Assembly (NCBI GenBank): GCA_044892525.1
Contig: CM097888.1
Coordinates: forward strand, 52,762,001-52,826,000
Length of the DNA stretch: 64,000 nucleotides
Direction of reading: 5' to 3'
Source: Schmidtea polychroa
Taxonomy: Eukaryota
Both the position numbers and the translations under genes were made by a program. Shown one piece after another: positions 402-63,594 of this stretch; position 1 is the first letter of the stretch; the number at the start of each line of letters is the position of its first letter. A model generated the notes under the pieces. The model was given only the letters and a program-made list of their open reading frames with translations. It was not told where the DNA came from and did no database searches.

Positions 402-1596
402 CTATGTTAAATACTGATTTAAATACTGATCATTTACTTCAGATTCTGACGTGAGATCATTCTCAAGGTCTTCATACGAATAAGTCAGATTTCCTAAATT
501 ATTTTCTTCTTGAATACAGTGAATTCTTCTTGTATTATTACTCCTTAATAGAGGGCAGTTAGTAAAAAAATGATCATTTTTACCGCCTATTAAACAACAC
601 TTGCTTAAAGGGCAATTGTTCCGAATATGACCTGATTCACCACAACAGTAACATTGACCGGGTTGTAAAGGTCGCAATTCTGGTTCCGGTAATCCTTTCG
701 CTTTGTTGTAAACTCGTCTTGCAATATGTTTCAAAGAAACCGTAGGCCTATTGTATCTCTCATTAACCAATAAACTTTCTGAGCTTCGTCTTCTTTCGGT
801 ACCATATCGTCTATTGTCATAATTTTCGTAACTTCTATTTTTACTGACATACCGGTTAGTCTCAGGATGGTCTAATCAATGGTTGAACATTCTGCCTTAC
901 TGGAATTTTATTTCTTGTTACCGATGCATACGACGATTTTTTCCTATCATCTGCCAATACAAATACCTCTCTGGTGTCTTCTGTATGTAAAATATTTTCA
1001 AAATTTACATTCAATTTCTCTATTTCTGTAAGAGATACTTCTGGGTTCATTGCAATTGCATCCTTAACTTTTTCTGAATACATACGTCTTGTTACAATAT
1101 CCTTGACAATCATGTCTTCTGTTTGATTTGCGGAAAGTACTTCGCGCACTAATTTCCTCACTCTGATTACAAAATTTGCAAACCTTTCTTTCGATCTCTG
1201 CTTTATCAGACTCATGTCTTCGATGTTTTGCAAAAAACTTTTGAATTTTACATATTTTAAAATAAAACAACTTTTTATCTCTTGATCTGAGGCCGGAGTC
1301 TTTTGTGCTTCCTTAAAGGCCATCCAAAAATCTTTTGCGTCTCCATGCAATAACAAATCGAATGTTGCTCCTAAATTGAGCGAATTTATCGTCACAAATT
1401 CTTCAATAGATACAAGCCAGTCCTTTGCATTTTCTTCTTTTCCTCCGAAAAACTTCTTTATCACTGGATAAATTGAATCTTGAATATTCTTTGGCGAAGA
1501 TTCCACAATTTTCTGCCTTTGCTGTGATCTCGTCAGAGCTGAGATTTCGGCCTGGTCGCCAGTAACATTTTTATTAAAAGTCATTAAAACTAACAC
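402..1596 (-). mobile_element. Ty3/gypsy-like gag remnant (capsid-like region plus zinc knuckles), split by one frameshift near 870-880
   Basis: ORF 862-1596 (gag-like helical region) continues in a shifted frame (TNRYVSKNRSYENYDNRR...) into ORF 402-770, which has a CX2CX4HX4C knuckle CYCCGESGHIRNNC and a degenerate second one (CLIGGKNDHFFTNC). No pol follows within 1-401. Confidence 0.75.
1551..1561 (-). promoter_or_regulatory. Putative tRNA primer-binding site (TGGCGACCAGG) of the gag remnant
   Basis: Minus strand reads ...AATAAAAATGTTAC-TGGCGACCAGG at the 5' end of the gag ORF. TGG start is typical of an LTR-element PBS; the same TGGCGACCA occurs at 41398 ahead of a gypsy pol remnant. Confidence 0.5.
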
Positions 1597-1882
1597 GTTA
1601 TTTTCAAATATATATATTTATTATAAAATCTGAATATTTAAACAATATATCAATTTAAATATCATCACTTATTATTATTATTATTTTGAATAAATTATAC
1701 ATCATTCGATAGGGAAATCGATTTTCAGATAAAATGTGAATAAAAATTAAAAGTTATTGTAAATTTTTGTTAATTATACAATGCTAATTGCATAACGTAA
1801 TCAATACCAAAAATTAGAAATAAATTTACATTTTTTTACAATTTTCTTTATTTAGATCAGTTTTTATATTTCCTAATTTTAG

Positions 1883-10219: not shown

Positions 10220-13200
10220 TAGGGTGGGTCGAAAATTTTTTTTTTCTCCAAACATGCCAAAAAAGTTGTGCTTATGCTAGAAAATGAAATATCCCTGCAA
10301 AAGACTGCTGTTTAAAAGGGTTTACAGGTCCCAACTTTTGTTTGTATGTATTAGTACTATCCCAGTAAAAATGCTCGCACACGTGCCATTGTAAATTCAT
10401 CCTGCAAGCAGTCACACGCTTGCAGAAAGACCATTTTTGACATGCTCTATTCACAAGTCCAAGCTAACGCGTGCATGTATAGAGAGGTTAATTCACGGAA
10501 GCACCTTCACACAAGCACTCACAAAGACAATTTCTTCTGAACAATACTAACACACACACTACAGTCAACACATAATCCACATGGATACTACTAGTCAGTC
10601 TAAACTCAGATAATTTAATTTGTTTCGATTGGATGTCAAGTGTTTGCTGGACCTAATTAAAAAAGTTAACTTAATGATTCACTTTTATTTTGCCAGAGCT
10701 TAGTACAGAAGAGCAGTTATGAAGGGACAGAGAAATAAGCAATTTCGCAAAACAAGAAGTAAATCACGTCATTGTCTGTTTGGTCAAACTTGTGAACTAC
10801 CCAGAAACCAATTACCTACTTGTGAAGATGTGTTTCGTGATTACTGTTACAATGAGAAATGTACGCAATTTCATACTGGCTTTAACGAACAAGCAACTCT
10901 TCTCGCAAATAAGGTGAAGGAAATTTATATGAAGGCAAGTATCCCAACTGTTGAGTTCAGTAGTATTGTGGTTCGTGTCAAGCGACTAATATCAAAAGTG
11001 CGTGAATTAGAGAAGTATCCAGAATGCAAGAGGTCATCTGCCAAATTTCAAGATAAGTTAAGCTCGTTTTCCAAATTGTTTGACATATGTTGCTGCAAAT
11101 GTTTTAATGATGGTGCTCGTGGAAGAAGTCAGTGTACATGCCGATTGGCCTTGAAAATTCCTACCTTAGAGTGGGAGTTCTGGATTGACCAACAAACTAC
11201 CAGAAACATGAAAATCGGAAATACGGACAGACAGGAAATCTCAAAATTGAAGAGAAAACAAACGAAAAGCAGCCCTACAGGAAAAGGAAAACAAATGAAA
11301 AATGAAATAATGGACACTGAAGTTAACGATCTACATCCGACCTCAAGAAGTGACACGGAGAATGAAGCCGCTAGTGATGAAAGTAAAGATAAGTTAGACA
11401 ATTCAACAGAAAGCTCAGAGTCAAGCGTAGAAGAATGTGATGAATTTCAAAATAGAAGACATTATCCTGAATTAAGTAAAGCTGTTGACAGATGTGGTGT
11501 GAGCAACAGAGACACGTGTTTGCTAGTAAACGCTTTTCTGAAAGATATGGAACTGTTATCCTCTCAAACAATCATCGATCCCGCAAAATTACGGTGTCAG
11601 AGAAAGTACTGGAGGGAGAGAGAAATTGAACAGCATTCAGCAGAAGCGAAAAACTTGATTTGCCTCGGTTTCGACGGGAAACAAGATTCCACCTTACTTC
11701 ATAGAAGGATCCTAAAAGAGGAGCATTATGTGATTGTCGCCTTTCCAGGGGATACATATATCGATCATGTTGTACCTCAAAGTAGTAAAGCTGTGGATAT
11801 TGGCAAAGAAATCATGTCAATCATCGTTAGCACGCAGTCCTCACTGACCCTTCAAGCAATTGTGTGCGATGGAACCAATACAAACACCGGAAAAAATAAT
11901 GGAATAATCAGAAGACTCGAAAAAAGCCTAGGGCGACCTCTACAATGGCTGATATGCTTGTTGCATGCAAATGAATTGCCATTCAGGAAGTATTTTTCAG
12001 TCGTCGATGGTGGAGAAACAAAAGGTCCAAAAACGTCATGTGGTGAAATAGGAAGCGTTCTTGATTTTGATCCAAAAGACAAGCCCGTAGTAGCCGTTAT
12101 GTCCCTTCCTGGAAAGGTCGTAGATATTAGTGAAAATGTCAAGAAAGAATTGAACACTGATCAATTGTATTTCCTCAGAGTATGCTTGGCAGTCCAGAAA
12201 GGGTACCACAACAACAAGGATGTCCCTTTTCTACAAATGGCACAACCAGGAAATTTGAATCACAGTCGCTGGCTAACGAAAGCTAATAGAATTCTGCGAC
12301 TATATATGTCCGAAACTGCTCCATCTGAACTTCTCATGCGAATAGTGAAATTTATTGTCAATTTCTATGGACCGTCATGGTTTTATATAAAGACTCACTC
12401 GTCATGCCAAGATGGTGCAAGAGATATTTTTTATATGCTCCAACTTCTGCAGGATTTGGATCCATCAGACCAAGAAATCATCTTTCCTGTCATTCAGAAC
12501 AACAATTACTTCTCACATCCAGAAAATATACTCCTAGCTGCTGTTGGTGATGATGATGAAGAAATCAGAAAGTTTGCAACAGAAAAAATCATAACTGCAA
12601 GACAAAATTTTCTCCCTTCCGAAGTGATTCGCACTATGGACAAGAATACTGTCTTTCTTCAGTCGTCTGCTACATCATATGTTGACATGATTGACTGGAC
12701 AAAATGTAATTTGACGCCTCCCCCTCTTTTATCTCATATATTGGATCATGAATTGAAGATGAATAAGAAAATTACATTAGAACAATTTCCCTGTCATTCT
12801 CAAGCCGTCGAAAGAGCCATCAAAGATGTTTCTTCTGCCAGTTGCAAAGTGTTTGGTCACAAGTCCAGACATGGTATGGTACTACTGTGTAAAAAATCAA
12901 GGAAGGAATTGCCCAAGGTGCAAAGCAAAGCTGATTTCATGTGACTTCTTTTTATGCCCTCGCTAATACATTTCTAAACTTTTGGCTGGATGTTTTTAAT
13001 AAAAAATAATTTCGAAAGTTGATTTTTGTCTTTGAAAAGGATAATTCAAATTTGGCCCTTCCTAATCACTGACGTTGTCAGGATATATTTCAATGCGGGA
13101 TGAGGACACAGAATATACTATCTCAGCCCAAGAGAGTAAATAATATACTTATAAGCTCTTAAGAAAGCTACATCTAAATATGGACAAAGGCGCAAAACAC

Positions 13201-16909: not shown

Positions 16910-37213
<20,304 letters not shown>

Positions 37214-50771: not shown

Positions 50772-51617
50772 ATCACAAAGACTTACTTAGGGACTTCTTC
50801 TGATTTTTAAAGACAATATTTCGTATTATCATAAACATTTTTTTGTTTATCAAGAATAAATTATTTGGAATAAATTATTATCAACAAGAATTTATCGCTA
50901 CTTGACTTAAAGTAGAACTGCTAGAAGTCGTCTGGTAATATTTATTTATAATTAGAGCGTGTTGCGAAAAATATATACAGCTGTAGCCCTCTTCCCTGGC
51001 AGTATGCGCGCCTCAACTTATTTTCTTTTCTTGAAATGATTTCAGTATTTAGAACGGAGAAAGACACATCTGCTCCATGAGATAACACATTAGAATTCTA
51101 TTCAACTGATACAGGCCAATCGGCTCTCTTCCCGATTTCAGAAAATCTCCCATGTTATTTATTTGTTGAAAATTTTCTCCAAATCGTATGGATACATCTG
51201 AATTCGGATTTCCATCCCTGCCGAGTTTCACTTCGGTTAAAAGCCGAAATATTTCAGTTTGTCAAACGACATCATTTGGTGCTATATCATGACATGTTAA
51301 TCTTATTTTTATATTTTACATTTCATTTATNNNNNNNNNNNNNNNNNNNNNNNNNNNNNNNNNNNNNNNNNNNNNNNNNNNNNNNNNNNNNNNNNNNNNN
51401 NNNNNNNNNNNNNNNNNNNNNNNNNNNNNNNNNNNNNNNNNNNNNNNNNNNNNNNNNNNNNNNNNNNNNNNNNNNNNNNNNNNNNNNNNNNNNNNNNNNN
51501 NNNNNNNNNNNNNNNNNNNNNNNNNNNNNNNNNNNNNNNNNNNNNNNNNNNNNNNNNNNNNNNNNNNNNNNNNNNNNNNNNNNNNNNNNNNNNNNNNNNN
51601 NNNNNNNNNNNNNNNNN

Positions 51618-52350
51618 ATTTTATTAATAAAAATCGATATTCTTACATCTTTTTCACTATATTTCGATAGCATCACTATCATCATCAGGTTACCTACATT
51701 CACGACGGATGAATAACTATACTATATTGATAATAAATAAATTATAAAAAAATTATAAAATCTATAAATTTTTAAATTATAAATAACAATTTTAAACAAT
51801 TATTTTTAAAATAATTTTCAACAATCAATTATTTTAAACTTTTAAAATTATTTAAAAATATTATTTTAATTATTTTTTTAATTATTTAACATAACTATTA
51901 TTAATATACATCAACATACAAAAACTTAATTAAAAATGAATTAAATTTTTTAATTAAGTTTTTGTATGTTGATGTATATTAATAATTAAAAACATTCAGC
52001 ACACACGTATTCACTGCATTCTGCACATTGATTTTAGGATTAAAAGTTCTTATCAATAATGCTTCACAAATCACACTCTCAAAACAATTATCAAAATTTT
52101 TTGATAATATTTTCAAATCCGACATTCCTAATTCTCTCATACAGACTTTATTATGATCCTTAATATTGGACACTCGTTTCGGTCAACAGTGTTCTTACAC
52201 TCTAGTACAGAGATGACAGAAAGTCTCTCCAATGTATGTGGCATTACACACATTACATGTGAATTGATAAACGAGATCCGAACACAATCCAACTGGCGTT
52301 TGAGATTTATTAACAAACATTTTACGTAATTTGCACGATTTTGAATCATT
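51618..52350 (-). mobile_element. Penelope-like element 3' fragment (GIY-YIG coding end, AT-rich 3' region, hammerhead-like motif)
   Basis: Minus strand: LVYQFTCNVCNATYIGETFCHLCTRV*EH...CEALLIRTFNPKINVQ...VLNVF; 3' region homologous to 63343-63591. Confidence 0.85.
51650..51725 (-). ncRNA. Hammerhead ribozyme-like motif in the Penelope 3' region
   Basis: Minus strand: GUAUA^GUUAUU...GGUAAC CUGAUGA U GAUAG-UGAUG-CUAUC GAAA UAUAG; same strand as and ~250 nt downstream of the GIY-YIG ORF end. Confidence 0.6.
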
Positions 52351-52456
52351 CAAAAGGACTTTTGATGATGAGTTCGAAGTTCATACCCTTGAAGGGTCCA
52401 AGGTGCAAAAATTTTAAAACCTTATAATATATACCAAACAAAAGATAATTGATAGA

Positions 52457-57810: not shown

Positions 57811-58624
57811 AGGATAGTGACCTTATTTGTACAATAAAAAATTATTATATAGTTACAACCAGTCTTTTGCTATCTAACCAAATATATGCAAGTAGCCCTT
57901 TTTATATGTTTTAGCTGAACGTCGAAAATTGTTAGAAATTTATAAATATATCTTATATGCTAAAATAAATGATATTTATGTGTAATCATATTAACTATAA
58001 TATCTATAGGTTTTTCTATCCTACCTAATTATGAGAGGAAAACTGTTGAAATATATCGTAGAACTTGTAAAGAATAAGAATAACTTGAGAAATTCCAAAA
58101 ACTTTATTTTAGAAACTTTATTAATAGTACCCGGTGTACCGACAACAACACAATCAGCAATAACCTATTAGGAAATAATAATCAGTGACATAATTTGAGT
58201 ATCCAGACAATCAAAAATAATAAATCATACATGCAAGCATAACGTAATATAGGGTAAAGGTTAGGGAAATCAAATATTACATTATAATTACATCAGAAAA
58301 CATATGTTTGTTGTGTTTATATAATTATTTTAATTTAATTTAATGATTAATGAACACAATAAAAGTAGAGACAAAAACACACACTTAATAAAGGCCGTAC
58401 CAAAATATCATGTACCTTATGTATTATTTTGATCTATAGTCTTACAAATATCAATATGAAAATTATTGAATTATAAAAAAGATCAAACGTGAAANNNNNN
58501 NNNNNNNNNNNNNNNNNNNNNNNNNNNNNNNNNNNNNNNNNNNNNNNNNNNNNNNNNNNNNNNNNNNNNNNNNNNNNNNNNNNNNNNNNNNNNNNNNNNN
58601 NNNNNNNNNNNNNNNNNNNNNNNN

Positions 58625-60560
58625 TTAGGATTCTCATCCATTAACACATTAATATCTGTTTGCAAATCACTAAATAATTCCACAAATTTCATTTAATAAA
58701 TTATACGCTCAAAACTTATCTTTTTTTTCATTTTTCCCAGCTAATCTTTATTTCCAAAAACTATCTCTGTCGGGCTTTTTCCTGTCGTTTTTTGTTTGGT
58801 TGCATTTAATGTAAATTCGACTTCTGGTAGTATCTCTGCCCAATCCGTCTTCCTTCTGCCCCGTAAAGTAGCATTTATCAGCTCTCATATTGTCCTGAAT
58901 TGCCTTCTATCTGTCCATTTGTTTGGTGATGGTATGGACTCGAAAAACATAACTTAATATCAAGTTTCTTTGTGAATTCTCTCATCATTCCTGATTCAAA
59001 CGACTTCCCACAATCAACCCTTATCTCCTTTGGGCATCCAAATCTTAAAATCCATTTTTCTAAAATCGTTTTCTTTATTGCTTCCTCGTCTTGTCTTGCT
59101 ATAGCTATCAAGACTTGATACTTACTATACTGGTCTATTATACCAAATATATACTTCTTGTGTCCTTTTGTTTGGTGTCCTTTTTGGTCCACATATATCC
59201 ACGAATATAATTTCGAACATTCTAGTTTTTTTACTGGTTTTTTCGGTGTAATTGTTATAGCCTTGGTTTTTGACAAGTACTCACAACTTTGAATAGTTTC
59301 CTGAATCTGACTCCACAGGATTTTCCCAATATATCTATCTTCCATAAAATCAGCTATCTTCTCGACTCCAGCATGACACAATAGTCTATGGATTTCCTTA
59401 TGGTTTCATGTATCTCGTTTTGTGGTATCATCGTTTCTGTCGTAATTCTTCTTACAAATTTCCTTATTGATTGGTGCTTCTATCTTTTTCTTTGATCGAG
59501 TCTAGTAATCTAGATTTTATCTTTCCTCTCTTAGCTTCTTCGTGGGCCATTTGACATTAAACACACGTTTCACATTTAGTTCTGGACACCATGTCTGCAT
59601 TTTGGTGATTAACACATTTTCTGTATTCAAAGATTATATCCAAACTGCTCAAATAATTGATCCAGGATTGGAATTATGAAGTAATTGGCTTCCTTCCTTG
59701 TAATGCAATATCCTTTTTCATGGCTCGTCATCGAGTGTGATTCATACGCAATTACTCTCTCCTTTCCATCTTTATCTCTTTGTGAAAGCAGTGCTCCAAT
59801 TGTATCAAAACTGGCATCAGTATCTAAAATGAACTCCTTTCTCAGATCCGGAAAGCATATGATTGATGCCGTTGTTTGTGCTACTTTCAATCCCTCAAAT
59901 AATTTATTCGCTCCTTCAGTCCATTCCAGTTTTTTGTTACTGATGAATCTTCTATAATAATTGCAAATGCCTAAAAAGCTTCAAAGTTTCTTTACGCAAC
60001 TTGGCTTTCCAAAGTTTTGTATAGCCTGAATCTTAGATGAATCTGTCTGTATTCCTTCTTTACTGATTATGTGTCCTAAGAATCCGATTTCTTTCTGTAT
60101 TATTTGACACTTTTCTTGGTTAATTTTTAGTCCTGCTTCCTCGATCACTTTTAAGACTTCACTGAGTATTGTATAATGTTTTTCTTTACTACTCGAATAA
60201 ATCAAAATGTCATCCAAATACACCTTTGCTCCATTTATTTTGCCTATTACCTTTGTCATCATTTCCTGGAACGTACCTGATGCTGGAGTAATTCCAAAAG
60301 GCATTCTATTGAAATAGTATTGCCCTTTCTTTTTTGAGAATGCTGTTTTCTCTTGCGATTCTTCATCTAACTCCACTTGGTAATATGCATTACCAAATTC
60401 GATTGAGCTTTGGCAACAATCTTTCGGTTATCGCGTCGGTGTTTACCGCTGCCACCATATTAGGATTCTCATCCGTTAACACATTAATATCTGTTTGCAA
60501 ATCACTAAATAATTCCATAAATTTTATTTAATAAATTATACACTCAAAACTTATCTTTTC
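58625..60560 (-). mobile_element. Internally deleted Ty3/gypsy element: short LTR - PBS - RT(part) - RNase H - integrase - LTR
   Basis: ~100-bp direct repeats at 58625-~58728 and 60458-~60560; RT YFNRMPFG...YLDDILI (59981-60376), RNase H ILDTDASFDTIGALLSQ (59627-59890), integrase HAG...IRVDCGKSF...SSPYHHQTNGQIE (58878-59381); frameshifts; left LTR runs into an N-gap. Confidence 0.9.
60445..60457 (-). promoter_or_regulatory. Primer-binding site TGGTGGCAGCGGT (tRNA-Leu 3'-end complement)
   Basis: Immediately follows the 5' LTR end (...AATCCTAATA) on minus; complementary to the recalled eukaryotic tRNA-Leu 3' end ACCGCUGCCACCA. Confidence 0.8.
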
Positions 60561-63342
60561 TTTTGTTTCTTATTTAAAAAAATTTCAATCTTTCTTTTAA
60601 AATATTTTTCAATAAAAATATTTTTAAAATTTAACAAAATTTCTAATTAAAACTCTTAGAATCTTTCATCTTCCTCATAATATTTATTAAAAAATTGATT
60701 ATGATTCAATAAAGATATCGATGTTTTTTATGTTAAATATTAAATTTAACCCAAATGTTGCCACCGTCCTTTTAAAAGAACGCTCCTTATATATTTTTTT
60801 ATTTTGCATACGCTAGTTATTTAAAGATATCTATAATAAGAATGTGTTTAGCATATCACAATTACAAGTCTTGACCAGTTAACTTCTTTGTTTATTCTTG
60901 ATTTTGTATACACTGCGGTATTTAGTTCTATGATAGTGCAAGAAGTTTTATATTTTTTTTTGAATAAAATAGTTTTGACAACATCTGGGTTAATTAATTT
61001 GAAGCATGCAAAAAATCATTATTAGTGAAATAAATTTTATTACTGAAAAATTCGAGAGTTATTTTAAAAAATATGATAAATTTCGGTTTTCTAATTTTTT
61101 AATGGTGAACACGGCCAAGGATTTAATAAAATATCTGTTATAATATTATATGTAGAAATTGCAATAAAATAAGATATAGTAATTCCAAAAACAGCATGAA
61201 AGAAAATTATTTTTGCAATAAGTTTGGAATAATAGGCGACATGACAAATTTTGCAACGTTTGCAACACTTGCAATGGAGAAAAGACATGAGAAATAAATG
61301 TCTAAGTATCTCATTTAGAGAACATTCAAATGAAAATACCTTGAAAGAAAATCATAAACCAACAAAGATCAAGACACTTACATATAGTTAAGGGTTGCGG
61401 ATTTTACATAACTATATTTAGAATTGAACTTACAGAAAAATATAAAAAGGTATTCCAATCATTTGAGTTAAAGTTATAAATAAAAAACCCATTAAATAAA
61501 ATGAACTTCATCTTGAATAAGAAATAAGGAAATCCCACAGCAATTAAAATAAACAACTTCCAATAAATTTATTGTTGAATATTGTTACATGACGTTCTTT
61601 CCCAACAATTGACAAAACATCTACAAAATAAGTTCATAACTTCCAGAGATGAAGGAAAGTTTCCTCATTGAATGACGGATTAAGTCAAATGCTATGCCAA
61701 ATTGGGGTCGAGATTTATTTTTAAGGAATTTACACAATTTTAGGGATTTCGAAACTATCGTAAAAGAATGATTGAAACTTTTAAAAACTTTAAAAACTAT
61801 TTTCAGAAAAATATCGATGTTTTTCAAGTCAATTTCTGAAAAGTGAATTTCTTGAAAAAGGCAGTTCCAAAATTTCGTGAGTATCAAAAACATCGATATA
61901 TTACTGATTTANNNNNNNNNNNNNNNNNNNNNNNNNNNNNNNNNNNNNNNNNNNNNNNNNNNNNNNNNNNNNNNNNNNNNNNNNNNNNNNNNNNNNNNNN
62001 NNNNNNNNNNNNNNNNNNNNNNNNNNNNNNNNNNNNNNNNNNNNNNNNNNNNNNNNNNNNNNNNNNNNNNNNNNNNNNNNNNNNNNNNNNNNNNNNNNNN
62101 NNNNNNNNNNNNNNNNNNNGAATCAGTAACGATATAAAAGCATCGATATAATTACTGATTCATAATCCAGCCTTCTAATAAATACAATGTCAATTGAAAA
62201 GATATCGGATGTGAAAATTGAAAAAAGTTCTTATGATATTATTTTTTACATTAAAAACTCGGGAAAAATCATGAAAATTTATGAATGGTTCCATTTATCA
62301 AATTGTTTTATTGAAAATCAAACAATAGTTAGAAGGAATGGCGGAGGAGACATATTTATAAAATACGTATGGAACAAATCAAATTATTTATTAATATTCG
62401 AAAACTAACATTTTATTACTGGCGCTTTCTTTTTCATCTGAGGGAGCATTGACTTGAAGCGATCCCGAATTTTCAATGGCATTGATATAAATCCTGTTAA
62501 TCTCCGACAAAAAGGTTTCGCACAATCCAAATCCGGATAAAAATATATATGTATATTTATATATCTATACGTATATAAACAACACGTTAATTGCTTCACA
62601 GAAATCGGGGTTTTTGTTTTAATTCTATTAATAAACACAAAACATTTCTGTAGAAATTTTGGATAGAAAATGTTTTGAAAAAAACAGGTAGATGAATTTT
62701 TTATATGGGAAAATAAAACATACTGAATTTTTCTAGTCAGATAGGAGCAATTAAGTTTCTATGTGACTGACTTAGGGACAGAAGGCTACAGAGGGATGTA
62801 ATGTATGTAAAGAGACGCTTGCCCTGCTGTTGTGTTCGACTAAATTATGAATTTTTACAGGATTTTTTAACACCAAAATTGCTGTTTTAATTTCAGTGTA
62901 TTTCTGCTATTTTGAATATCGTATGTCAATTAGTTGGAGAAATTCCATCAACAGTGAAAACTGATGAGCAAATGATAGAATAGGAAAGGGCTTCCTTCTC
63001 TATGGCGATTCCCAATTAAATCTGTTCCTGTGTCGCTTTTGTAGTTTTGACTTGTGCAAGCAGAATTTACAATGGACATTCAGTTGCTAATTTGATTGTA
63101 TTTTTTATGTAGATTTTACTCTTCCTTTGAAGAGAAGTTTTGTAGATTTTTGCATTCACTTTAACACGTCAAACAATGTCAAATCTGCCTACAGTAATTT
63201 CTAATAAGNNNNNNNNNNNNNNNNNNNNNNNNNNNNNNNNNNNNNNNNNNNNNNNNNNNNNNNNNNNNNNNNNNNNNNNNNNNNNNNNNNNNNNNNNNNN
63301 NNNNNNNNNNNNNNNNNNNNNNNNNNNNNNNNNNNNNNNNNN

Positions 63343-63591
63343 AAAGATTTTACAGCAGATGAATAACTATACAATATTGATAATTTAAAAATATTTTTCA
63401 ACAATAAATTATTTAAACTTTTATAATTCTTAAAAATTTTATTTTAATTATTTTTTTAATTATTTAACATAACTATTATTCAATATACATCAACATACAA
63501 AAACTTAATTAAAAACATTCAACACACACGTGTTCACTGCATTCTGCATATTGATTTTAAGATTAAAAGTTCTTATCAATAATGCTTCACA
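63343..63591 (-). mobile_element. Penelope-like 3' end (second copy of the 51.7-52.07 kb family)
   Basis: Homologous to 51709-52070 (CEALLIRTFNLKINMQNAVNTCVLNVF; GATGAATAACTATAC at 63358); continues into an N-gap. Confidence 0.88.
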
Positions 63592-63594
63592 TAT

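What the first reader, a model, noticed from the sequence alone, without database searches (positions are those of the whole stretch)
51650..51725. Hammerhead-ribozyme-like motif in the 3' region of a Penelope-like element
Seen: on the minus strand, ~250 nt after the GIY-YIG ORF end, AUA^GUUAUU..GGUAAC-CUGAUGA-U-GAUAG(UGAUG)CUAUC-GAAA-UAU. Helix I stays paired in the second copy (19033-19061) through different pairs (U-A vs U-G, U-G vs C-G). A third copy shows the start of the motif at 63358-63372 before an N-gap. Known: Penelope-like elements carry hammerheads in their pseudo-LTRs, usually minimal type I forms. Inference: this one folds best as a type III-like form (closed helix I, 3-4 bp AU-rich helix III, AUA triplet) with an extra U between A9 and G10.1, an atypical variant.
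Basis: partly seen in the sequence, partly recalled or inferred. Interest (0 to 1): 0.8.

Follow-up and report, generated by a model that had tools for sequence, protein, structure and literature searches.

The report
Penelope-like element hammerhead ribozyme, ordinary type
The motif is a real hammerhead-ribozyme sequence of the small kind that Penelope-like retrotransposons normally carry where their flanking repeat meets the start of their gene; its "extra U" is typical rather than odd, and the proposed unusual (type III-like) fold is possible but unproven.

Summary
The sequence is as described. A complete hammerhead core (CUGAUGA, one extra U, a 5-6 bp helix II, GAAA) lies about 290 nt after the stop of a decayed GIY-YIG endonuclease remnant at 51646-51722 (-). 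It occurs again twice at 18958-19106, as the two arms of a head-to-head palindrome; the left arm's core is 3 nt shorter.

Chance does not explain it: 0.0026 such motifs are expected per 64 kb. Seven relatives fetched through the endonuclease protein carry the same motif 73-142 nt after their stop codons. Across them, helix II is paired in 100% of cells and 4 of 5 pairs change on both sides.

All relatives are type I minimal hammerheads, as published for Penelope-like elements:
- an unpaired U at the 5' end of helix II;
- an AU palindrome in place of helix III;
- cleavage 3' of the core;
- an open helix I.

A9, the extra U and G10.1 form an ATG in all 11 copies, the likely start codon of the element's ORF. 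The extra U is therefore the norm.

It has low odds by chance (about 0.6%), but no relative has it and the predicted folding ensemble gives it almost no weight. Its status stays open. I file the motif as a new member of a known kind.

The parts
51646..51696 (-). Copy 1 hammerhead domain, read as type I by homology. Helix I 5' strand ends at 51689; core C3-A9 at 51688-51682; unpaired U at 51681; helix II with its loop at 51680-51666; G12-A15.1 at 51665-51662; AU palindrome at 51662-51659; A17 at 51658; predicted type I cleavage at 51658|51657; helix I 3' strand from 51657.
   Evidence: the covariance model built from 11 homologous motifs scores it 61 bits.
51680..51682 (-). ATG formed by A9, the 'extra' U and G10.1: the likely start codon of the element's ORF.
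   Evidence: All 11 motifs have this ATG, and it opens a frame with a shared M-x4-S-K-Y beginning. In L022 the called gene 1-270 is in this frame. Same layout as PAc (PMC11167929).
51712..51722 (-).
   Evidence: Found only in this family; function unproven.
51618..51657 (-). Tail: the first codons of the ORF copied 3' of the hammerhead. It runs into the N run that begins at 51617.
   Evidence: Tails of 30-40 bp and internal initiation of reverse transcription are described for these elements (PMC11167929, PMC8557442).
51723..51978 (-). 3' untranslated region between the endonuclease stop codon and the motif. It contains an internal inverted duplication at 51897-51986.
51979..52380 (-). GIY-YIG endonuclease remnant of the element, one reading frame. 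It is broken by two in-frame stop codons and is 5'-truncated: no reverse transcriptase part was recognised upstream.
   Evidence: tblastn with relatives covers 51985-52374, E 1e-47, up to 70% identity, one frame; stop count; alignment with relatives.
19031..19122 (+). Copy 2, right arm of the palindrome. Hammerhead domain at 19054-19106; core 19062-19068; unpaired U 19069; ATG 19068-19070; type I cleavage site 19094|19095; type III-like site 19032|19033.
   Evidence: 68 bits with model R1.
18942..19030 (-). Copy 2, left arm of the palindrome. Hammerhead domain at 18958-19007, with a catalytic core three bases shorter than in the other copies, so it is not a complete hammerhead core.
   Evidence: 58 bits.
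63343..63594 (-). Copy 3: a 5'-truncated copy holding the endonuclease C-terminal end, the 3' untranslated region and the upstream strand (63358-63372). It is cut by the N run that ends at 63342, so the core is not visible.

Best explanation
This is the minimal hammerhead ribozyme of a Penelope/Poseidon-type retroelement family in an AT-rich, probably insect, genome. It sits where the pseudo-LTR (5' untranslated region) meets the start of the element's ORF. A9, the unpaired U and G10.1 form the likely start codon, and helix II and GAAA lie within the first eight codons.

It appears downstream of the endonuclease ORF because insertions of these elements end in a partial second unit (the pseudo-LTR plus a short tail).

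By homology it is type I. Helix I is open, and helix III is replaced by a self-complementary AU run that can pair only with a second copy. Cleavage is predicted after the A that follows this run, at 51658|51657 on the minus strand and at 19094|19095 on the plus strand.

Like other hammerheads of these elements, it is too weak to fold alone. It would need a second copy in a tandem transcript, the element's own protein, or both. Its inferred role is to trim multi-unit transcripts.

The copies in this window are dead relics: one 5'-truncated copy with a stop-broken endonuclease remnant, one 5'-truncated copy cut by an N run, and one head-to-head pair of about 90-nt ends. In this family the type I helix I is reduced to G-C, then U-A or U-G, then a G.A mismatch, then A-U, so low activity is expected.

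Shown: the sequence, its homology, helix II covariation, helix I covariation at the inner pairs, the ATG overlap and the position in the element. Inferred: cleavage itself, its site, and the need for a dimer or protein.
For: - Core and helices are present in two copies and are far above chance.
- Seven relatives were reached through the endonuclease C-terminal piece (phmmer, 13 hits; P0001 search). They carry the same motif 73-142 nt after their stop codons.
- Counts on alignment A2: 88% of cells paired, against 25-54% when partners are slid. Helix II is 100% paired, with 4 of 5 pairs changed on both sides. Type I helix I is 77% paired, with 3 pairs changed on both sides. None of 500 shuffles reaches the covariation score.
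- Pair 2.2/1.2 is G-C in relatives, G.U in copy 2 and A-U in copy 1.
- L024 shares the G.A mismatch of the window copies.
- An ATG at A9-U-G10.1 and a shared reading frame occur in 11 of 11 copies.
- L022 shows two motifs 1252 nt apart flanking an endonuclease piece, i.e. a flanking-repeat layout.
- Literature: minimal hammerheads with an unpaired base at stem II, a palindromic helix III, a dimer mode and opposite-strand pairs (PMC4209133); an ORF start at stem II, protein-assisted cleavage and tails (PMC11167929); inverted 5'-truncated copies (PMC8557442).
Against: - The type I helix I in the window copies has only 2 contiguous pairs. Its predicted energy is not favourable (+0.1 and +1.1 kcal/mol with helix II).
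- No Rfam hammerhead model matches, even at E up to 10. The same models also miss the clear type I relatives, so this weighs little.
- Only three or four related copies of this family could be seen.
- All relatives came from short metagenome contigs of unknown hosts.
- No cleavage or RNA-end data are available.
- Part of the conservation could come from coding for the first codons.
Confidence: 0.72

Rival explanations
1. Substrate-strand switch. In this family the core uses an upstream strand, GUUAUY, to close helix I. With a short AU helix III this would make a monomeric type III-like ribozyme that cuts at 51718|51717 (19032|19033 in copy 2), about 30 nt 5' of the start codon.
For: - Helix I has 6 contiguous pairs in both diverged copies, plus a 3-4 bp helix III and a valid AUA triplet.
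- Only 0.5-0.7% of random AT-rich upstream flanks give such a closure.
- The stretch between the two helix I strands is the most diverged part of the copies (5 of 17 positions), while the strands stay paired.
- The centre of the copy 2 palindrome lies 2 nt from this site. That would fit a template RNA whose 5' end is near it.
- The type I helix I is degraded here.
Against: - Neither L024, the relative whose helix I strands are most like those of the window copies, nor any of the other six has this closure.
- Both pair changes are on one side only, and the copies are not independent.
- The fold is -2.4 and -2.6 kcal/mol against minimum free energies of -12.5 and -14.1, and its helix I has pair probability of 0.001 or less.
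- Copy 2 has a competing 10-bp hairpin that uses the same upstream strand.
- The palindrome arms include U16.1 and A17, so they do not start exactly at the cut.
- L024 has the same weak type I helix I without any upstream partner.
- The motif was noticed because of this fold, so there is selection bias.
Confidence: 0.15
2. A conserved relic that does not cleave. The block would be kept because it holds the start codon, the first codons and perhaps a protein-binding hairpin. On this view the hammerhead likeness is inherited but no longer catalytic in this family.
For: - The motif overlaps the ATG and a shared peptide start.
- Helix I is weak in both readings, and helix III is AU-only.
- Published hammerheads of these elements cleave poorly or only with protein, and cleavage was not needed for insertion in vitro (PMC4209133, PMC11167929).
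- Large clades of these elements thrive without hammerheads (PMC8557442).
Against: - Every catalytic-core letter is intact in copies 1 and 2R and in 5 of 7 relatives.
- Helix II changes by paired substitutions that alter the encoded residues. This is RNA-level selection, not protein-level selection.
Confidence: 0.1
3. Chance resemblance in AT-rich repeat DNA.
For: TGA and TA runs are common here. The folds are not more stable than shuffled sequence (z = 0.34 for copy 1).
Against: 0.0026 hits are expected per 64 kb. The same motif sits at the same place in seven relatives, with covariation.
Confidence: 0.02

Closest known systems
Minimal hammerheads (min-HHR) of metazoan Penelope-like elements (Cervera and de la Pena 2014, PMC4209133)
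   Same: - Lies in the flanking repeat next to the RT/GIY-YIG ORF.
- Full CUGAUGA and GAAA core.
[quoted passage not shown]
- Helix III replaced by a short palindrome.
- Short helix I.
- Many solitary truncated copies, and pairs on opposite strands.
   Different: Helix II is 5-6 bp here, against 7-8 bp in the Schistosoma families. Helix I of the window copies has only 2 contiguous pairs, against the usual 4-5.
Hammerhead of the Anolis Poseidon element PAc (Frangieh et al. 2024, PMC11167929)
   Same: The motif spans the pseudo-LTR to ORF junction. C3 and G8 precede the start codon, the ORF starts at stem II, the cut site lies a few codons into the ORF, and a tail follows.
   Different: A different host group and sequence. 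Protein-assisted cleavage was shown for PAc; nothing has been tested here.
Drosophila virilis Penelope hammerhead variant (PMC4209133)
   Same: A 2-bp helix I, a bulged base at stem II and a small palindromic helix III.
   Different: The D. virilis motif also has a bulge inside helix II and overlaps an intron end. Neither is seen here.
Type III hammerheads of viroids, plant virus satellites and plant retrozymes
   Same: If the upstream closure is real, the strand order is the same: cleavage site, closed helix I, core, closed helix II, open helix III.
   Different: There is no match to Rfam Hammerhead_3. Helix III is 3-4 AU pairs, loop 1 is 17 nt and unconserved, and there is no evidence of loop-loop contacts. 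The relatives are type I.
Natural hammerheads with an extra residue between A9 and G10.1 (De la Pena and Flores 2001, as cited in PMC4209133)
   Same: One unpaired nucleotide at that position.
   Different: Here the nucleotide is always U, and it is the middle base of an ATG.

Membership tests
Hammerhead ribozyme (any type) | Catalytic core C3-U4-G5-A6-N7-G8-A9 and G12-A13-A14 | tested here: met
   Intact in copy 1 and in the right arm of copy 2. The left arm of copy 2 has a core three bases shorter. Among the relatives, L003 has one core change and L024 has A at the free position 7.
Hammerhead ribozyme (any type) | Helix II closing the core, supported by covariation | tested here: met
   5-6 bp. 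Across 10 distinct sequences 100% of cells are paired, and 4 of 5 pairs change on both sides.
Hammerhead ribozyme (any type) | N-U-H triplet followed by a helix I strand that pairs next to C3 | tested here: inconclusive
   There are two candidate sites, both AUA followed by GU. The downstream site gives 2 bp, a G.A mismatch and 1 bp. The upstream site gives 6 bp.
Hammerhead ribozyme (any type) | Self-cleavage | not testable with these tools
   No biochemical data and no RNA-end data are available here.
Hammerhead ribozyme (any type) | Match to the Rfam hammerhead covariance models | tested here: not met
   No hammerhead family matches, even at E up to 10. The control shows that the same models miss the clear type I relatives and L017, so this test has little power for minimal forms.
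Minimal hammerhead of Penelope-like elements (type I) | Located in the pseudo-LTR beside an RT/GIY-YIG ORF | tested here: met
   The endonuclease remnant lies at 51979-52380 (-), about 290 nt upstream of the core. Relatives with RVT_1 and endonuclease domains carry the motif 73-142 nt after their stop codons.
Minimal hammerhead of Penelope-like elements (type I) | [quoted passage not shown] | tested here: met
   A U in all 11 aligned motifs.
Minimal hammerhead of Penelope-like elements (type I) | Helix III absent or a short palindrome, so the motif would work as a dimer | tested here: met
   AUAU in copy 1 and AUAUAU in copy 2. Relatives have AUAUAU, AUUAAU or ACAUGU. Dimer formation itself was not tested.
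Minimal hammerhead of Penelope-like elements (type I) | Open helix I of about 4-5 bp with the strand 3' of the cleavage site | tested here: inconclusive
   Relatives have 3-5 contiguous pairs, with covariation. The window copies and L024 have 2 contiguous pairs, a G.A mismatch and 1 more pair.
Type III hammerhead | Helices I and II closed, helix III open, with this architecture conserved among relatives | tested here: not met
   The closure can be drawn in the window copies. None of 7 relatives has it at helix I of 5 bp or more and helix III of 3 bp or more. Ensemble probability is 0.001 or less. There is no Hammerhead_3 match.

The most novel reading that the evidence does not exclude
In this one family of Penelope-like elements the hammerhead may have exchanged its substrate strand. 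The decayed downstream helix I partner would be replaced by an upstream strand, GUUAUY. A dimer-dependent type I minimal ribozyme would then become a self-contained type III-like one that cuts about 30 nt 5' of the start codon. The head-to-head junction 2 nt from that site would mark the 5' end of the processed template RNA. This would be a natural example of a ribozyme changing topology inside a retroelement lineage.
Probability: 0.15. Interest if true: 0.6.

Novelty: new member of a known kind. Interest (0 to 1): 0.3.

Why it matters
Hammerheads at the pseudo-LTR to ORF junction of Penelope-like elements are already known, so the main result is a correct annotation.

The relatives give clean covariation support for this clade's ribozyme. 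They also show that the bulged U is the middle base of an ATG, the likely start codon. This is a simple reason for its constancy, and it agrees with the one element of this kind studied biochemically.

What remains of interest is the upstream strand found only in this family. If other copies confirm it, it would show how a minimal, dimer-dependent hammerhead can become a monomeric one by a change of pairing partner.

Tried and rejected
- **Rfam.** Searches at gathering threshold and at E up to 10 gave no hammerhead hit, only miRNA-like hits caused by the palindrome. The control on relatives shows that Rfam misses this class.
- **Other type I registers in the window copies.** I tried the cut directly after GAAAU-A, and a larger helix III hairpin ending in UC^G further downstream. 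Helix I does not pair in either, and the second is not kept in copy 2. This was by inspection.
- **Closer family members.** None found:
  - word-indexed protein search with the 67-residue C-terminal piece: no candidates;
  - metagenome DNA pattern: 13 hits, none from this family;
  - bacterial/archaeal genome collection, by DNA and by protein: nothing;
  - viral contigs: nothing.
- **Contigs without usable downstream DNA.** L001 (the closest relative, 66% identity), L019 and L021 end at or near the stop codon. No DNA was returned for P0007. L023 shows no core in its last 124 nt.
- **Host identity.** Not obtained. Cluster look-ups gave no names. Only insect names appear among distant relatives of a neighbouring transposon ORF.
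- **Minimum-free-energy folding.** It does not recover either hammerhead fold.

Full report
**1. What is there**

In order:
- an AUA triplet followed by GUUAUU;
- a 17-nt stretch;
- GGUAAC;
- CUGAUGA;
- one U;
- GAUAG, a UGAUG loop, then CUAUC;
- GAAA;
- UAUA and GUGAAAAAG.

The same motif stands on the plus strand at 19031-19106. The 28 nt from CUGAUGA to GAAAU are identical in the two copies, where no match is expected by chance. Overall the two copies are 89% identical over 104 nt.

The left arm is another copy, whose TGA run in the core is three bases shorter. The palindrome centre is at 19030|19031.

A further copy at 63343-63594 (-) shares the endonuclease end and the 3' untranslated region with copy 1 at 93-94% identity. 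It is cut by an N run just after the upstream strand. I did not try to learn what the N runs hide.

**2. More than chance**

I scanned with a descriptor that requires the core, 0-1 inserted base, and helix I, II and III of at least 5, 4 and 3 bp. It finds exactly these two sites in the window. It finds 6 sites in 149 Mb of composition-matched random sequence, which is 0.0026 per 64 kb.

**3. Context**

Upstream of copy 1 lies a GIY-YIG endonuclease remnant at 51979-52380 (-). It aligns in one frame to the C-terminal third of reverse transcriptase plus endonuclease proteins (tblastn E 1e-47, up to 70% identity; alignment).
- It is interrupted by two in-frame stop codons.
- It is 5'-truncated, and no reverse transcriptase part was recognised upstream.

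Relatives with longer ORFs carry RVT_1 and HTH_animal domains. The element is therefore a Penelope/Poseidon-type Penelope-like element (PLE), and all its copies in this window are dead fragments.

The host is unknown. The window has about 26% G+C. The only named relatives of a neighbouring transposon ORF are from insects.

**4. Relatives**

A phmmer search of 1.84 billion representative proteins with the C-terminal endonuclease piece gave 13 hits. A further search with the best hit gave 11.

Contigs were fetched for twelve of these proteins. Seven contigs hold DNA downstream of the stop codon with a hammerhead motif 73-142 nt after it: L002, L003, L004, L005, L020, L022 (two motifs) and L024. 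All of these motifs share one layout:
- CUGAUGA (L024 has A at position 7; L003 has one core change);
- an unpaired U;
- a 4-6 bp helix II;
- GAAA;
- a six-base palindrome (AUAUAU, AUUAAU or ACAUGU);
- one non-G base;
- a strand that pairs with the bases just 5' of C3.

This is the type I minimal hammerhead described for PLEs. [quoted passage not shown]

**5. Covariation**

On the 11-sequence alignment A2 I counted pairs for the type I structure.

| Measure | Result |
|---|---|
| Cells paired, whole structure | 88% |
| Cells paired when partners are slid by 1-3 columns | 25-54% |
| Helix II, cells paired | 100% |
| Helix II, pairs changed on both sides | 4 of 5 |
| Type I helix I, cells paired | 77% |
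| Type I helix I, pairs changed on both sides | 3 of 5 |
| Shuffles reaching the covariation score | 0 of 500 |

Pair 2.2/1.2 is G-C in most relatives, G.U in copy 2 and A-U in copy 1. The window copies and L024 share a G.A mismatch at 2.3/1.3, which leaves only two contiguous pairs.

A covariance model built from A2 scores the three window copies at 68, 61 and 58 bits. It finds only one other weak site, a relic with a broken core at 58017-58061.

**6. The 'extra U'**

In all 11 motifs, A9, the unpaired U and G10.1 spell ATG. This ATG opens a frame that begins M-x4-S-K-Y, and in most relatives the frame continues to a K-W-R a few codons later. In L022 the called gene 1-270 runs in this frame.

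This matches the Anolis element PAc. [quoted passage not shown] The U is therefore the rule for this kind of ribozyme, and it is likely pinned by the start codon.

The paired substitutions in helix II change the encoded residues, so they reflect selection on the RNA.

**7. Why it lies 3' of the endonuclease ORF**

PLE insertions are partial tandems. In PAc, reverse transcription starts inside the next unit, about 110 nt into the ORF, which leaves a tail (PMC11167929; PMC8557442). Here 28 to at least 42 nt follow the type I site before the copies diverge or reach an N run.

Inverted 5'-truncated copies next to each other are a known PLE signature (PMC8557442). Opposite-strand pairs of minimal hammerheads have been reported (PMC4209133). 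PAc protein cleaves and extends both DNA strands. The copy 2 palindrome fits all of this.

**8. The type III-like reading**

For it:
- The upstream GUUAUY pairs with GGUARC over six contiguous pairs in both copies. With 3-4 AU pairs as helix III and an AUA triplet, this gives a formally valid hammerhead.
- Only 0.5-0.7% of random upstream flanks of this composition do as well.
- The 17 nt between the strands are the most diverged part of the copies.
- The palindrome centre lies 2 nt 5' of the predicted cut.

Against it:
- None of seven relatives has such a closure, including L024, whose helix I strands are most like those of the window copies and which has the same weak type I helix I.
- The two pair changes are each on one side only, and the copies share ancestry.
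- The fold is worth -2.4 and -2.6 kcal/mol, against minimum free energies of -12.5 and -14.1. Its helix I has a pair probability of 0.001 or less.
- In copy 2 the same upstream strand sits in a competing 10-bp hairpin.
- The palindrome arms include U16.1 and A17, so they do not begin exactly at the cut.
- The motif was flagged because this fold was seen, so there is selection bias.

I put this reading at about 0.15.

**9. Rfam**

No hammerhead family matches at the gathering threshold or at E up to 10. The same search also misses the clear type I motifs of L022, L002, L005, L020, L024 and L017. The negative result therefore says little.

**10. Verdict**

This is a genuine hammerhead motif of the known PLE kind, and a new member of that kind.

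Noticed in passing
window 10704-12941 (+): An uninterrupted ORF of 746 codons with no Pfam match. A 99% identical protein cluster (P0022) is seen on 15 public contigs. About 78 relatives at 30-57% identity include unnamed proteins of beetles, a psyllid and a thrips. It looks like the transposase of a multi-copy insect transposon of an undescribed family.
   Followed up: partly
window 58881-60427 (-): Ty3/gypsy-type pol remnant in three stop-to-stop pieces: reverse transcriptase, RNase H and integrase (Pfam RVT_1, RT_RNaseH_2, rve). It is unrelated to the Penelope-like element.
   Followed up: partly
window 405-1617 (-): Two adjacent ORF pieces with weak Gag_p24_C and zinc-knuckle matches, below Pfam's cut-offs. 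Probably the gag of another LTR element.
   Followed up: no
window 58017-58061 (+): A weak match (16 bits, E about 0.05) to the model built from the hammerheads of these elements. Helix I and the GAAAUAUAU part are kept but the catalytic core is changed at several positions. Possibly an old decayed copy.
   Followed up: no
window 25685-25786 (-) and 25837-27529 (+): Further short fragments similar to the C-terminal part of endonucleases of these elements (up to 62% identity). No recognisable hammerhead lies downstream of the first.
   Followed up: partly
window 51897-51986: A 90-nt inverted duplication (93%) inside the 3' untranslated region of copy 1. It is part of the reason this region is longer (about 290 nt to the core) than in relatives (73-142 nt).
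   Followed up: no
L022 277-348 (-): A tRNA gene (63 bits) lies between the two hammerhead copies of this metagenome contig, next to the first hammerhead and its tail. This suggests two separate insertions beside a tRNA gene.
   Followed up: no
L017 281-308 (+); L018 1142-1169 (-): The DNA pattern scan also picked up unrelated hammerhead-like motifs in metagenome contigs. L017 is a neat type I minimal form (helix I GUUCA/UGAAC). L018 has two motifs head to head around a palindromic centre.
   Followed up: no
relatives L002, L005, L024, 20-60 nt after the hammerhead: A conserved AUGGC...GCCAU stem-loop follows the hammerhead inside the first codons of the ORF. The window copies keep its 5' half (AAUGGCGA in the left arm) and then end. 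This would fit reverse transcription starting inside a stem-loop, as reported for PAc.
   Followed up: no
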